Sequence record: PQ741806.1
Length of the DNA stretch: 64,000 nt
Reading direction: 5' to 3' (one strand)
Part shown: one piece after another, positions 28,387 through 30,862 of the stretch
Layout: each line of letters begins with the position of its first letter
How positions within the stretch are numbered: position 1 is the stretch's first letter
The notes under the pieces: generated by a model
The model's database searches: none
What the model was told of the DNA's origin: nothing
Seen by the model: only the letters and a program-made list of their open reading frames with translations
Position numbers and translations under genes: made by a program

Positions 28387-28411
28387 AAACCCTCCCGTAA
28401 TGGGAGGGTTT
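28387..28411. terminator. Bidirectional terminator AAACCCTCCC-GTAAT-GGGAGGGTTT
   Basis: 10-bp stem between convergent transcription units. Confidence 0.8.
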
Positions 28412-28483: not shown

Positions 28484-28852
28484 TTAATATCCTTCATTAA
28501 GTAGTTCTGCTAGAGCACGTGCCTGTGAAATATCAGTAGAAGCAAAAACATCAGAAAGATAGTTATCATGTTCTTTTGCATTCTGACGCAATTCATCCAT
28601 TAGATGTTTATTAGATACCGCCCATACTTTCCACAGATTTTTATAATCATCATATTTGGGATTATACCCGTCTAGTGGTGGTTTTCCTTTACCAGCTTTC
28701 CAATGGTTGGAGTATATGCGATATCCTTTACAATCTAACTGCCAAGCTTCCTCAATTGTTCTGCCATCAGGAAGCCTTGCGTAAAGAGCCGAGAATCTTT
28801 TGTCACCAACAGATGAACATTCATATCCTCCTCGGCGCTTCCACTGATATAT
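28484..28852 (-). CDS. Hidden 122-codon ORF lacking an ATG/GTG/TTG start (IYQWKRRGGYECSSVGDKRFSALYARLPDGRTIEEAWQLDCKGY...SQARALAELLNEGY)
   Basis: Manual translation; fills an otherwise empty 370-bp gap; AT-rich third codon positions as in neighbouring genes; begins at an ATA overlapping the gp82 TAA. Confidence 0.75.
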   Translation of the reverse strand: MYQWKRRGGYECSSVGDKRFSALYARLPDGRTIEEAWQLDCKGYRIYSNHWKAGKGKPPLDGYNPKYDDYKNLWKVWAVSNKHLMDELRQNAKEHDNYLSDVFASTDISQARALAELLNEGY

Positions 28853-30768
28853 TACTTTGGGTTCTTATAGGTATTAATAAACTTCTCTAGCAGGGTGTCC
28901 ATTTTAGGAGCACCCATGATCTTCTGTGTGATTTCAATAGCATTAACCCTACCACCTGTTAAGTTTACGCCAACTTCACGGCGATGGTGTTCACTAATTC
29001 CTTCCATCATTGAGAATTCCATCACACATGTTTCACGTGCAATATTTAGAATCTGACTAACGTTAGGATATGTCGACACGATGTCAAGGTCGGCGATATG
29101 ACAGAAGATTAAGGTTTTATAATTCGGTAAATCTTTAACACACTGCAATCCATTTGGACCTGCCATGTATGATGGTAGTGTAACAATCCAATCATTATGG
29201 CCAATAACATATTGATCAAGTTCATGCACCATCTGATCTGAACTTGAACCAATGACACATGGCTCTGGTCTATTCAAATACCAGAAGTGCATATCGTCAC
29301 ATAGTCGTTTTGGGTTAGAACTAAAGTTCTTATAGTCAGATGCCTTAGAGAATAGACTTATAGAGCGACCAAGGTCATTTACTTGTTCATCAAGTTGTTC
29401 TAGTCGAATGGAGTCGATGATGTTATAAAGACCATATTTGATTTTATGCTTAGTCTGCATCTCACGGTGCCAATCGATACCACCAAGATGTGCAGTTTCT
29501 TTAAAGGTTAACTTACCAAATTCCATTACATATCTAATAGAATCACCATAGGTAAAGTTATCATTTAATATAAAATCATCCACCGGTACCCATTCATTAC
29601 TACCTACATTTTTAATATATTTAGTAATAACGCCGCCTGGTCGGTCAACTAGTTGTTTATTAAAACCTTCAATAAAATCTTCTAAGTCCTTATCATTTTT
29701 AATGGTCGTGGATTTATCGATGTTTAGTTCTTTTCTAAGAATAGACTCTAACCGATAGTTAGGATCACGTCCTTTAGCTAATCGAGTTACTCGATAAGTT
29801 GACATAGAATCGATACATTGAAAACTAGAGGGTGCTGTAATCCAATGCCATTGATCCTCCGGTCCTTTAGATTTAGTGACCCCAGATGCAGTGGTGGTCA
29901 TAGGTTCATCAATCTTAAAATGGAAATACCTATAATTCTTAGGTACCGATGGATCAGAAAAAACATCAGCTGGATTAACACCATAGTGTTCTAATGTTTT
30001 TAAGATTCTACCAATGTCGAAGCTAATATTCCAGAATGCGAAGAAATCTGGTTTCCAGGTATGTAGTCGTTTAAAACATTCAATAATAATATCTACTGGT
30101 GTTTCAACAACCATTACTTCAATATCTAGACCACGTTCTTTAATTAGATGTGATAATACCTCTTCTTTTTGTGCTTGTTCTAATGTCTCTTTCACTGGAT
30201 CTTCAATATCACTAACCCATCGTTTTAAATAGGCTAAGAAAGCTTTGTTCTTATGTGTAACTGACATACAGATAATCTGACCATCGTTCTCAGCTTCATA
30301 AACGTTGGTTTCGATGTCACCGCCAGCAACAGTGTTTAGAGAGATTAGACCAGGATAACGTTCTTGATAATCATGCTTCAGATAACAGGTTGAACTAACA
30401 TCACTGCCATATAGGTAAGGACTACGCGCTAGTTGACGAAGAGATCTAGCCGAATAGTCACCTAGGATTTTACTAATCTTACGTTTCATGTCAATTTGAG
30501 TTGACATGTATTTAACTAAGTTACGCTCATATTCGTAATCTTTCTTTTCTTTATGGTTACGCATTCCTTTTGAGGTAATCCAAAAAGGACGCTGGTAGTT
30601 TTCCCACATCCTTAAATTATTTGCAGTTGTACCATCTTCAAAATGAATTCGTTCTTTAACGAAATGCGCATCTGTAAACTTACCAAATTGATCAGTACAA
30701 TAAGTAATATGTTTGGCTTCAATGCCCTTAATCTTTTTCTTATTTGTAACCTGTTGTTCATTAGACAT
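28852..30768 (-). CDS. B-family DNA polymerase, 3'-5' exonuclease plus motif-A part of the split enzyme (gp82-like)
   Basis: ExoI DIET, ExoII FWNISFD, ExoIII YNIID, polymerase motif A DLDIVSTYP. Confidence 0.8.
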   Translation of the reverse strand: MSNEQQVTNKKKIKGIEAKHITYCTDQFGKFTDAHFVKERIHFEDGTTANNLRMWENYQRPFWITSKGMRNHKEKKDYEYERNLVKYMSTQIDMKRKISKILGDYSARSLRQLARSPYLYGSDVSSTCYLKHDYQERYPGLISLNTVAGGDIETNVYEAENDGQIICMSVTHKNKAFLAYLKRWVSDIEDPVKETLEQAQKEEVLSHLIKERGLDIEVMVVETPVDIIIECFKRLHTWKPDFFAFWNISFDIGRILKTLEHYGVNPADVFSDPSVPKNYRYFHFKIDEPMTTTASGVTKSKGPEDQWHWITAPSSFQCIDSMSTYRVTRLAKGRDPNYRLESILRKELNIDKSTTIKNDKDLEDFIEGFNKQLVDRPGGVITKYIKNVGSNEWVPVDDFILNDNFTYGDSIRYVMEFGKLTFKETAHLGGIDWHREMQTKHKIKYGLYNIIDSIRLEQLDEQVNDLGRSISLFSKASDYKNFSSNPKRLCDDMHFWYLNRPEPCVIGSSSDQMVHELDQYVIGHNDWIVTLPSYMAGPNGLQCVKDLPNYKTLIFCHIADLDIVSTYPNVSQILNIARETCVMEFSMMEGISEHHRREVGVNLTGGRVNAIEITQKIMGAPKMDTLLEKFINTYKNPK

Positions 30769-30844: not shown

Positions 30845-30862
30845 GCCTCCCCTAGGGGAGGC
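30845..30862. terminator. Terminator hairpin GCCTCCCC-TA-GGGGAGGC
   Basis: Palindrome sharing the core CTCCCCTAGGGGAG with 23744-23775. Confidence 0.8.

What the first reader, a model, noticed from the sequence alone, without database searches (positions are those of the whole stretch)
28484..28861. Hidden 122-codon gene behind the DNA polymerase gp82 with no canonical start: AUA initiation or a -1 frameshift fusion
Seen in sequence: a stop-free, phage-like frame fills the gap after gp82 but has no ATG, GTG or TTG in its first 84 codons. Two entry routes are visible. First, the gp82 stop overlaps an in-frame ATA (TAATA, one base from the usual TAATG coupling). Second, the last gp82 codons AAC CCA AAG TAA contain the heptamer C_CCA_AAG (28861-28855); a -1 slip to CCC AAA GTA enters this frame exactly. 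Established knowledge: A_AAG is a shift-prone sequence in bacteria. Inference: a fraction of the polymerase/exonuclease subunit could carry this extra domain.
Basis: partly seen in the sequence, partly recalled or inferred. Interest (0 to 1): 0.75.

Follow-up and report, generated by a model that had tools for sequence, protein, structure and literature searches.

The report
Frameshift-extended phiKZ DNA polymerase subunit
The giant phage phiKZ very probably makes a longer version of its DNA polymerase subunit gp82: some ribosomes slip back one base on CCCAAAG at the end of the gene and add a conserved 122-residue domain that no genome record annotates, a trick shared by many related phages but not yet shown at the bench.

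Summary
On the minus strand, gp82 (30768-28852) ends AAC CCA AAG TAA. A stop-free 122-codon frame (28852-28484) follows in the -1 frame and has no ATG/GTG/TTG in its first 84 codons. That start-less part is under strong purifying selection and is a full-length member of phage family phrog_9995.

Comparison of about 30 distinct polymerase-domain junctions favours the frameshift route.
- All 18 lineages with the domain in the -1 frame carry C_CCA_AAG, G_GGA_AAG or A_AAA_AAG in the polymerase register. A 2016 review names these three as highly shift-prone in E. coli.
- 14 of the 18 have no usable start codon. The codon where phiKZ has ATA is ACA, ACT, GTT, GTA or GTC elsewhere.
- Polymerase genes without the domain lack the heptamer.
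- Of 188 long ORFs in the window and related loci, 14 carry such a heptamer near their end, and all 14 are this polymerase gene.
- Two distant relatives encode polymerase and domain as one ORF. Two lineages (three contigs) separate them by a single in-frame TAG.

The predicted product is 761 aa (88.4 kDa, against 74.0 kDa for gp82). No stimulatory RNA structure is conserved; the adjacent stop codon is the likely stimulator. The domain's function is unknown, with only a weak NADAR/DUF4326-like fold signal. I found no prior report. There is no experimental proof yet.

The parts
28852..30768 (-). gp82 = DNAP-N, the N-terminal subunit (NTD, exonuclease, part of the palm) of the split B-family DNA polymerase. 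It is the 0-frame product: 638 aa, 74.0 kDa, stop TAA at 28854-28852.
   Evidence: phrog_3011, E 1.2e-241; PMC13648687
28855..28861 (-). Slippery heptamer C_CCA_AAG in the gp82 register (last base of Asn636, then Pro637 and Lys638). This is the proposed -1 tandem-slippage site.
   Evidence: Conserved or replaced by G_GGA_AAG / A_AAA_AAG in 18 of 18 -1 lineages. Named as highly shift-prone in E. coli in PMC5009743.
28852..28854 (-). 0-frame stop codon TAA directly 3' of the heptamer. It is the candidate 'shifty stop' stimulator.
   Evidence: A stop abuts the heptamer in 10 of 11 lineages of the C_CCA_AAG/G_GGA_AAG class (TAA, TAG or TGA); 201phi2-1 has one codon in between. The stimulatory role is inference.
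28853..28855 (-). First -1-frame codon after the slip (GTA, Val). It links Lys638 to the domain.
   Evidence: All lineages of this class read [P/G]-K-V-x-Y-x-W after the slip.
28487..28852 (-). 122-codon domain (IYQWKRRGGYECSSVGDKRFSA...LLNEGY), family phrog_9995. Its first codon, ATA (28852-28850), is an ordinary Ile codon in the fused reading. The stop TAA is at 28486-28484.
   Evidence: (AlphaFold2 pLDDT 96.2)
28484..28600 (-). The 38-aa ORF annotated as PHIKZ082.1 in the phiKZ record. It is only the C-terminal fragment of the domain, starting at an internal Met codon.
   Evidence: phrog_33573 is this fragment
28735..28824 (-). Out-of-frame 29-aa ORF behind the SD-like GAGGAGGA (28833-28826), annotated as a gene in some records. 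It is probably spurious: the SD-like string is just the codons for R-G-G-Y-E of the domain.
28779..28844 (-). Hairpin predicted 10 nt downstream of the heptamer in this genome (z = -2.6). It is not conserved in relatives and no role is claimed.
28387..28411 (-). Intrinsic-terminator-like hairpin about 70 nt after the domain's stop. It marks the end of the gp82-domain transcription unit.
30845..30862 (-). Terminator-like hairpin upstream of gp82. No promoter-like site lies between gp82 and the domain on this strand.

Best explanation
gp82 and the frame behind it form one recoded gene. Most ribosomes decode ...AAC CCA AAG and terminate at TAA, giving the 638-aa DNAP-N subunit. A fraction slip back one base on C_CCA_AAG: tRNA-Pro re-pairs from CCA to CCC and tRNA-Lys from AAG to AAA. 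This is probably favoured by the slowly decoded stop codon that follows. Those ribosomes then read GTA ATA TAT CAG TGG... to the TAA at 28486-28484. The product is a 761-aa, 88.4-kDa DNAP-N with a compact 122-residue C-terminal domain tethered by a very short linker to the polymerase's palm-insertion region. The ATA is simply an isoleucine codon. Shown by comparison: the frame is translated, the slip site is under selection, and the fused architecture exists in nature. Inferred: the slippage itself, its efficiency (probably a minority of ribosomes, since no RNA stimulator is conserved), and the domain's function. For function, the best guess is an accessory enzyme or DNA-lesion-processing module of the NADAR/DUF4326 neighbourhood that travels with the replisome.
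For: (1) Codons 2-84, which have no start, are under strong purifying selection (dN/dS 0.02-0.06 where dS is measurable) and match phrog_9995 full-length.
(2) Slip-site conservation with substitution. Among -1 lineages, 9 have C_CCA_AAG with a stop directly after it (10 with Viktualia). 201phi2-1 has C_CCA_AAG with one codon before the stop. L013 has CTG GGA AAG TAG, which is G_GGA_AAG. Eight lineages, including phage Noxifer, have A_AAA_AAG about 5 codons after the conserved polymerase end. In every case the heptamer is in the polymerase register and the -1 frame is open into the domain. The base before the heptamer's first full codon matches X in 7 different codons (AAC, CCC, GTC, CTG, TCC, GCC, CTC), and is A in 8 of 8 of the A class (GGA, GCA, TCA, CTA).
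(3) In this window only 13% of codons end in C, CCA is 48% of Pro codons and AAG is 33% of Lys codons.
(4) 14 of 18 -1 lineages have no ATG/GTG/TTG between the upstream in-frame stop and the conserved W-K/R-R motif. The codon aligned with phiKZ's ATA is ATG, ACA, ACT, GTT, GTA or GTC elsewhere.
(5) Specificity. Of 188 distinct long ORFs, 14 have an A/C/G_XXA_AAG heptamer in register within the last 40 codons. All 14 are DNAP-N genes, each followed by a 125-150-codon open -1 frame. DNAP-N genes with no domain downstream (L115-L118, L121) end without a heptamer.
(6) Rosetta-stone fusions. P0080 (698 aa, from a phiKZ-like contig next to a PhiKZ_MCP gene) and P0151 (919 aa) encode DNAP-N and the domain in one ORF. 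In L112 and L113/L114 the two parts are in the same frame, separated by one TAG, with no start codon.
(7) The polymerase tail after '..LDxLLxAY' is variable and linker-like.
(9) The junction is present in all 47 phiKZ-type genomes and identical in 40 of them.
Against: There is no direct evidence: no peptide, western blot or ribosome-profiling data were found. No stimulatory RNA structure or upstream SD is conserved, so efficiency may be low. Four -1 lineages (PhiPA3, L059, PA1C, 201phi2-1/Viktualia) do have ATG or GTG at or near the domain's first codon. Stand-alone homologues exist in unrelated phages. The domain can therefore work as a free protein, and it may also be made separately. In the Psa21-like group (8 loci) the domain is in the +1 frame behind a conserved GAA AAG AAG, which a simple -1 slip cannot explain. 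The recombinant gp82-gp50 polymerase is active without the extension. Shiftiness of C_CCA_AAG was measured in E. coli, not in Pseudomonas.
Confidence: 0.85

Rival explanations
1. The domain is made as a separate 122-aa protein by termination-reinitiation (translational coupling) at the near-cognate ATA that overlaps the gp82 stop (TAATA, one base from TAATG).
For: PhiPA3 and L059 have TAATG at exactly this position, and PA1C has an overlapping GTGA. Stand-alone family members start at about this residue. ATA is a known weak near-cognate start (general knowledge).
Against: The same codon is ACA, ACT, GTT, GTA or GTC in other lineages that keep the heptamer, and two-mismatch codons cannot initiate. 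In 8 lineages the polymerase stop lies 12-30 codons past the slip site, inside the domain's coding region, so reinitiation at the N-terminus is impossible. This route does not explain selection on the base preceding the heptamer, the natural one-ORF fusions or the in-frame TAG class.
Confidence: 0.08
2. The frame is a decaying pseudogene in phiKZ: a start-codon mutation (ATG to ATA) of a formerly independent gene, no longer expressed beyond the annotated 38-aa remnant.
For: The phiKZ record annotates only the 38-aa ORF. The nearest sister genus has ATG.
Against: There are no stops or indels in 122 codons. The sequence is identical in 40 isolates and nearly so in 7 more. pN is 0.05 against pS 0.74 versus PhiPA3 in the start-less part. 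Many other lineages also lack a start yet conserve the protein.
Confidence: 0.02
3. The frame change is made at the RNA level, by transcriptional slippage of the phage RNA polymerase, rather than by the ribosome.
For: The A_AAA_AAG class contains a run of six A. Transcriptional slippage is a known alternative for dnaX in some bacteria (PMC5009743).
Against: [quoted passage not shown] The constraint on register (X_XXY_YYZ relative to the polymerase frame) is a ribosomal signature, not a transcriptional one.
Confidence: 0.03

Closest known systems
Phage lambda gpG/gpGT tail-assembly chaperone frameshift, and its relatives across tailed phages
   Same: A -1 slip on X_XXA_AAG (G_GGA_AAG in lambda) near the 3' end of a phage gene, with no strong RNA stimulator, yields a minority C-terminally extended fusion alongside the short product. 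Across relatives the recoding is conserved in position while the heptamer and even the type of recoding vary (PMC5009743).
   Different: Here the recoded gene is the catalytic N-terminal subunit of the replicative DNA polymerase, not a morphogenetic chaperone. The added part is a mobile, independently folding domain that also exists stand-alone and inside giant virion proteins. In phiKZ the heptamer abuts the stop codon.
E. coli dnaX (tau/gamma) frameshift
   Same: A replication-machinery gene is recoded at A_AAA_AAG, the same heptamer used by 8 chimallivirus lineages, to give two polymerase-associated isoforms that differ at the C-terminus (PMC5009743).
   Different: In dnaX the frameshift truncates the protein (a stop follows almost immediately) and is about 50% efficient thanks to an upstream SD and a downstream hairpin. 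Here the frameshift extends the protein by 123 residues, and no SD or hairpin is conserved.
E. coli copA / CopA(Z) frameshift
   Same: It uses the identical heptamer C_CCA_AAG in a bacterial mRNA. The heptamer identity is my own recollection of the 2017 copA report; the paper held here (PMC9548414) only confirms that bacterial copA frameshifting was reported.
   Different: The copA slip produces a short truncated chaperone from within a long gene and relies on a downstream structure. Here the slip is at the end of the gene and adds a domain.
TAATG/ATGA-type translational coupling of adjacent phage genes
   Same: The geometry is the same (downstream frame is -1, with a 1-4 nt overlap). PhiPA3 and L059 actually carry TAATG.
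   Different: phiKZ and 13 other lineages have no start codon, so coupling by reinitiation cannot be the conserved mechanism.

Membership tests
Programmed -1 ribosomal frameshift (tandem slippage, X_XXY_YYZ) | Canonical slippery heptamer in the 0-frame register | tested here: met
   C_CCA_AAG at 28861-28855 in the gp82 register. It is one of the three heptamers called highly shift-prone in E. coli.
Programmed -1 ribosomal frameshift (tandem slippage, X_XXY_YYZ) | The -1 frame is open from the heptamer and encodes a conserved polypeptide | tested here: met
   125 open codons; full-length phrog_9995 match; dN/dS 0.02-0.06.
Programmed -1 ribosomal frameshift (tandem slippage, X_XXY_YYZ) | Phylogenetic conservation of the shift site beyond what the encoded amino acids require | tested here: met
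   18 of 18 -1 lineages, with three interchangeable heptamers at two positions. The wobble base of the preceding codon always matches. 0 of about 174 other long ORFs have such a site near their end.
Programmed -1 ribosomal frameshift (tandem slippage, X_XXY_YYZ) | No independent initiation signal for the downstream frame | tested here: met
   There is no ATG/GTG/TTG in the first 84 codons here, and none in 14 of 18 lineages. ATA remains a weak near-cognate possibility in phiKZ.
Programmed -1 ribosomal frameshift (tandem slippage, X_XXY_YYZ) | Stimulatory element (downstream hairpin or pseudoknot, or upstream SD) | tested here: inconclusive
   A local hairpin is predicted in phiKZ (z = -2.6) but it is not conserved (consensus -8 kcal/mol, covariation 0). 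The A_AAA_AAG class has none. An adjacent stop codon is present in 10 of 11 lineages of the C/G class and is a candidate stimulator. This feature is not obligatory for the family: the lambda G/GT site lacks one (own knowledge).
Programmed -1 ribosomal frameshift (tandem slippage, X_XXY_YYZ) | Trans-frame protein demonstrated experimentally | not testable with these tools
   No proteomic or ribosome-profiling evidence was found in the literature searches.
phrog_9995 (phage protein family of unknown function) | Full-length profile match | tested here: met
   E 1.6e-55; residues 2-122 on profile positions 2-123 of 124. There are 970 representative clusters in the 1.84-billion-protein library.
NADAR superfamily (YbiA, DarG1-type NADAR, AdfN) | Significant sequence-profile match to a NADAR model | tested here: not met
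   No Pfam NADAR hit for the window protein. PF22397 NADAR-DarT1 is hit by only 2 of 66 family members, best E 0.0011. hhalign of the family profile against genuine E. coli YbiA gives probability 0.3%.
NADAR superfamily (YbiA, DarG1-type NADAR, AdfN) | Shared fold | tested here: inconclusive
   Foldseek gives YbiA (2b3w) at TM 0.53 with E 4.2. Several viral NADAR and DUF4326 models score TM 0.45-0.54 with E 0.5-7. The signal is recurrent but below significance.
NADAR superfamily (YbiA, DarG1-type NADAR, AdfN) | ADP-ribosyl-DNA glycohydrolase or N-glycosidase activity and catalytic residues | not tested
   The invariant polar residues of the family (D17, R19, S21, E34, K42, Y70, D101, Q110) suggest an active or binding site. 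They were not mapped onto NADAR catalytic residues.
Chimallivirus split B-family DNA polymerase, N-terminal subunit (DNAP-N, gp82) | Homology to gp82, with exonuclease plus partial palm and a separate DNAP-C | tested here: met
   100% identical to the PA7/SL2 gene. phrog_3011 E 1.2e-241. Described structurally in PMC13648687.
Termination-reinitiation coupling (TAATG/ATGA overlaps) | Start codon overlapping or adjacent to the upstream stop | tested here: not met
   The window has TAATA. Relatives have TAACA, TAACT, TAGTT and TAGTA.

The most novel reading that the evidence does not exclude
Chimalliviruses use a whole toolkit of recoding to tether a small enzyme stoichiometrically to a fraction of their replicative polymerases inside the phage nucleus. 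The toolkit would comprise -1 slippage at two different sites, readthrough of an in-frame TAG, an unexplained +1/-2 event at GAA AAG AAG, and outright gene fusion. The enzyme would belong to the NADAR/DUF4326 neighbourhood and would clear base adducts from the template ahead of the polymerase, for example ADP-ribose added by DarT-type defences. On this reading the frameshift sets the ratio of 'plain' to 'repair-equipped' replisomes and is itself an anti-defence adaptation.
Probability: 0.15. Interest if true: 0.88.

Novelty: new member of a known kind. Interest (0 to 1): 0.72.

Why it matters
phiKZ is the model nucleus-forming jumbo phage and a phage-therapy candidate family. Its replisome is being solved right now: a 2026 cryoEM preprint expressed only the annotated 638-residue gp82. 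If a fraction of DNAP-N carries an extra conserved domain, current models of the polymerase miss a component.

None of the 47 or more genome records inspected annotates the gene properly. They show it as a gap, a 38-aa stub, or two or three spurious small ORFs.

The case would add the catalytic subunit of a viral replicative DNA polymerase to the short list of bacterial and phage genes with conserved programmed frameshifting. It offers a natural series of interchangeable slip sites (C_CCA_AAG, G_GGA_AAG, A_AAA_AAG, an in-frame stop, and direct fusion) for studying how recoding evolves. It also gives the first functional context, physical coupling to a polymerase, for phrog_9995. That family is widespread (970 clusters at 50% identity), has no known function, and is also embedded in giant virion proteins.

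Tried and rejected
(1) My first idea was a 1-nt indel or sequencing error just after the ATG at 28824, which sits behind a strong SD-like GAGGAGGA. The SD-like string is just the R-G-G-Y-E codons.

(2) I looked for a stimulatory RNA structure. A hairpin is predicted in phiKZ, but RNAalifold on 9 lineages finds nothing conserved. The 8 A_AAA_AAG lineages show no significant downstream fold, with z from -1.8 to +0.3.

(3) Function by sequence gave nothing. Pfam finds no family. A profile search of PDB sequences gives only noise.

(4) Function by structure was inconclusive. Foldseek against the PDB has no hit at E below 1. Against BFVD only the domain's own family is significant, with NADAR and DUF4326 recurring at TM about 0.5.

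(5) hhalign of the family profile against genuine E. coli YbiA was negative, so I do not file the domain under NADAR.

(6) A -1 slip does not explain the Psa21-like +1 class. This class is left unexplained.

(7) Literature searches for chimallivirus or phiKZ frameshifting, ribosome profiling, and polymerase cases in the PRFect survey found no prior report.

Only the two pieces and the natural fusions were analysed.
Full report
**What is in the sequence**

The window is a phiKZ-type Pseudomonas jumbo phage. It is 100% identical over 1 kb to PA7, SL2, PA02 and about 40 other isolates. The finding lies on the minus strand.
- gp82 (30768..28852, 638 aa) ends AAC CCA AAG TAA.
- In the -1 frame the same bases read CCC AAA GTA ATA TAT CAG TGG AAG...
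- From ATA (28852-28850) a stop-free frame of 122 codons runs to TAA (28486-28484).
- The first ATG/GTG/TTG in that frame is at 28600. The phiKZ record therefore annotates only a 38-aa 'PHIKZ082.1'. Other records annotate nothing, or extra spurious small ORFs.

**The frame is a real, translated protein sequence**

- It matches phage family phrog_9995 over its whole length (E 1.6e-55, residues 2-122 on profile positions 2-123 of 124).
- tblastn finds it full-length in PhiPA3 (88%), 201phi2-1 (69%), PA1C (66%), Phabio (58%) and in unrelated N4-like Achromobacter phages (54%).
- The most conserved motifs lie in the start-less part: W4, R6, Y10-E11, S13-S14, G16-D17, and R19-F20-S21-A22.
- Against five relatives, codons 2-84 have saturated synonymous change (pS 0.74-0.81) but pN of only 0.05-0.30. 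Where dS can be estimated, dN/dS is 0.02-0.06. This is at least as constrained as the annotated 38-codon tail.
- The 81-nt junction occurs in all 47 phiKZ-type records and is identical in 40 of them. That excludes a sequencing artefact and my own first idea of an indel after the out-of-frame ATG at 28824.
- AlphaFold2 with a 66-sequence alignment gives a compact alpha/beta domain with pLDDT 96.2.

**How the frame is entered: comparative evidence**

I collected 80 IMG/VR loci through the domain, 34 through the polymerase C-terminus, and several named phages. I then read every polymerase-domain junction in register.

Class 1: the domain is in the -1 frame and the heptamer sits at the end of the polymerase gene. 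The codon listed is the one aligned with phiKZ's ATA.

| Lineage | Heptamer and stop | Aligned codon |
|---|---|---|
| phiKZ type | C_CCA_AAG TAA | ATA |
| PhiPA3, L059 | C_CCA_AAG TAA | ATG |
| L010, L014 | C_CCA_AAG TAA | ACA |
| L012 | C_CCA_AAG TAA | ACT |
| L013 | CTG GGA AAG TAG (G_GGA_AAG) | GTT |
| PA1C | C_CCA_AAG TGA | ATA, with GTG one codon upstream |
| Phabio | C_CCA_AAG TAG | GTA |
| 201phi2-1 | C_CCA_AAG TTG TAA | GTG 8 codons after the heptamer start; frame open throughout |
| Viktualia | C_CCA_AAG TAG | GTG 8 codons after the heptamer start; frame open throughout |

Class 2: the domain is in the -1 frame and A_AAA_AAG lies about five codons after the last conserved polymerase motif.
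- Members are L018/L119, L100/L101, L105, L106, Noxifer (L108), L109, L111 and L120.
- The polymerase 0-frame runs on for 8-32 unconserved codons.
- The -1 frame reads K-K, then a 0-16-residue linker, then the domain.
- No start codon is available in any of the eight.

Taken together, all 18 distinct -1 lineages carry a heptamer, and 14 of them have no canonical start. The three heptamers are exactly those that a standard review singles out as highly shift-prone in E. coli (PMC5009743).

The selection acts on nucleotides, not only on the Pro-Lys or Lys-Lys residues.
- The wobble base of the preceding codon always supplies X, across the codons AAC, CCC, GTC, CTG, TCC, GCC and CTC, and GGA, GCA, TCA and CTA.
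- In this AT-rich window only 13% of codons end in C, CCA is 48% of Pro codons, and AAG is 33% of Lys codons.

**Controls**

- DNAP-N genes with no domain downstream (L115, L116, L117, L121, L118) end without any X_XXY_YYZ and run straight into terminator hairpins.
- Among 188 distinct long ORFs in the window and the related loci, 14 have an A/C/G_XXA_AAG heptamer in register within their last 40 codons. All 14 are DNAP-N genes, each followed by a 125-150-codon open -1 frame.
- In the window's own long ORFs, in-register X_XXA_AAG occurs at 3 per 10,000 codons. gp82's is the only one next to a stop.
- Among 50 distinct loci without a gp82-type polymerase upstream, 32 have a canonical start within 15 codons upstream of the W motif. 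Most of the rest are embedded in longer ORFs.

**The fused architecture exists in nature**

- P0080 (698 aa) comes from a phiKZ-like contig whose neighbouring gene is a PhiKZ-type major capsid protein. It has the gp82 family (phrog_3011, residues 29-541; 30% identical to gp82) followed in frame by the domain (560-677).
- P0151 (919 aa) has DNAP-N, then phrog_2072, then the domain (697-817), then DUF4326 (836-907).
- In L112 and L113/L114, polymerase and domain are in the same frame, separated only by one TAG, with no start codon. That implies readthrough or suppression.
- The polymerase alignment shows that conservation stops at '..LDxLLxAY'. What follows is a variable tail of 5-35 residues, which is how a linker behaves.

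**Mechanism proposed for phiKZ**

With Pro-tRNA on CCA and Lys-tRNA on AAG, both tRNAs can re-pair one base upstream (CCC, AAA). The next 0-frame codon is a stop, which is decoded slowly. That is a classic context for slippage, although its role here is inferred.

After the slip the ribosome reads Val-Ile-Tyr-Gln-Trp and onward. The product has 638 + 1 + 122 = 761 residues and a mass of 88.4 kDa, against 74.0 kDa for gp82.

I found no conserved RNA stimulator.
- The hairpin predicted 10 nt downstream in phiKZ (z = -2.6) is not kept in relatives.
- The A_AAA_AAG class shows nothing significant either.
- I therefore expect a minority product, but I cannot estimate the efficiency.

gp82 and the domain lie between two terminator-like hairpins, with no promoter-like site between them on that strand. 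This is consistent with one mRNA.

**Rivals**

- ATA reinitiation fits phiKZ, PhiPA3 and L059 taken alone. It fails for ACA, ACT, GTT, GTA and GTC, and for the eight lineages whose polymerase stop lies inside the domain's coding region. It may add a little free domain in phiKZ.
- A pseudogene is excluded by the selection data.
- Transcriptional slippage is implausible on a run of three A. It also does not explain the register constraint.

**What the domain might do**

The function is unknown.
- The family is large: 970 clusters at 50% identity.
- It occurs stand-alone, and inside giant ORFs of 1,000-6,000 residues that match a 'virion structural protein' family.
- It often sits next to phrog_2072 and DUF4326/phrog_464.
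- Foldseek finds only weak matches, though they recur: NADAR proteins (E. coli YbiA, TM 0.53) and DUF4326.
- The best weak Pfam hit among the 66 members is the DarT1-associated NADAR model (E 0.001, 2 members).
- hhalign against genuine YbiA is negative.
- I therefore treat a NADAR-like adduct-removing activity as a lead only.
- It gains some biological plausibility from two recent lines of work. DarT-type DNA ADP-ribosylation threatens chimalliviruses, and phages counter it with NADAR or macrodomain enzymes (PMC13309987; PMC11825919).

**Relation to what is known**

gp82 is DNAP-N of the split B-family polymerase. Its residues 589-638 belong to the 'palm insertion' domain. The 2026 cryoEM preprint expressed the annotated gp82 CDS only and does not mention frameshifting, slippage or isoforms.

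No paper in the searchable library links chimalliviruses or phiKZ to ribosomal frameshifting. The PRFect survey mentions polymerases only through dnaX. No genome record I inspected annotates a joined CDS.

The mechanism is of a well-known kind, like lambda G/GT, dnaX and copA. The gene, the appended domain and the family-wide variety of recoding modes appear to be new.

**Unexplained**

In the Psa21-like group (L015, L019, L021, L026, L027, L028, L030, RVTF4) the domain is in the +1 frame.
- The polymerase tail contains an invariant GAA AAG AAG within otherwise variable sequence.
- The polymerase overlaps the domain by about 8 codons.
- The codon aligned with ATA is GTG, TTG, CTG, ACG or CGG.

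Ordinary initiation may suffice in some of these. A -2 slip of Lys-tRNA from AAG to the AAA two bases upstream would land in the domain frame, but I could not test this.

Noticed in passing
L110 (PhiPA3) 1938-2283; L113 2013-2383; L118 1920-2419: The DNAP-N gene is interrupted by a 345-500-nt intervening sequence at the codon for residue ~562/563, next to the catalytic Asp562 of motif A. In PhiPA3 the two halves are in different frames, and the annotated polymerase CDS stops early. These are probably group I introns at a conserved site.
   Followed up: partly
L015, L019, L021, L026, L027, L028, L030, L125 (RVTF4): polymerase tail: In Psa21-like phages the domain is in the +1 frame behind an invariant GAA AAG AAG 9-mer set in a variable tail. 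The start codon at the expected position is not conserved (GTG/TTG/CTG/ACG/CGG). This may be a -2 or +1 recoding site.
   Followed up: partly
L112 2266-2268; L113/L114 2704-2706: Polymerase and domain are in the same frame, separated by a single TAG (TAG CTG / TAG CTA), with no start codon. This implies stop-codon readthrough, a suppressor tRNA or TAG reassignment in these uncultured phages.
   Followed up: partly
L084-L087, about 1826-2047 and 2501-2725: The phrog_9995 domain homologue itself is split into two tblastn segments 450-490 nt apart, which suggests an intervening sequence inside the domain gene in some phages.
   Followed up: no
L036, L041, L049, L060-L065, L067-L072 (whole loci); P0010-P0139: The domain is embedded in giant ORFs (1,000 to more than 6,000 residues) that match phrog_16227 'virion structural protein' or virion RNA polymerase-like families. 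It behaves as a mobile module of polyvalent or ejected proteins.
   Followed up: partly
P0151, P0158, P0019, P0001: There is a recurrent accessory module of phrog_2072 + phrog_9995 + DUF4326 (phrog_464). P0158 is a DNAP-N fused to phrog_2072 + DUF4326 without the phrog_9995 domain.
   Followed up: partly
window 28735-28824 (-) and 28826-28833 (-): A strong SD-like GAGGAGGA followed by two out-of-frame ATGs creates a 29-aa ORF that several GenBank records annotate as a gene. It is a by-product of the Arg-Gly-Gly-Tyr-Glu codons of the domain.
   Followed up: yes
P0153 (746 aa): This DNAP-N homologue has an N-terminal HNH endonuclease region (residues 11-213) fused in frame. It is possibly a read-through of a homing-endonuclease or intron ORF.
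   Followed up: no
MT995928.1 (phage U5), H51: The feature under the domain region in this record is labelled 'major capsid protein', which looks like an annotation error.
   Followed up: no
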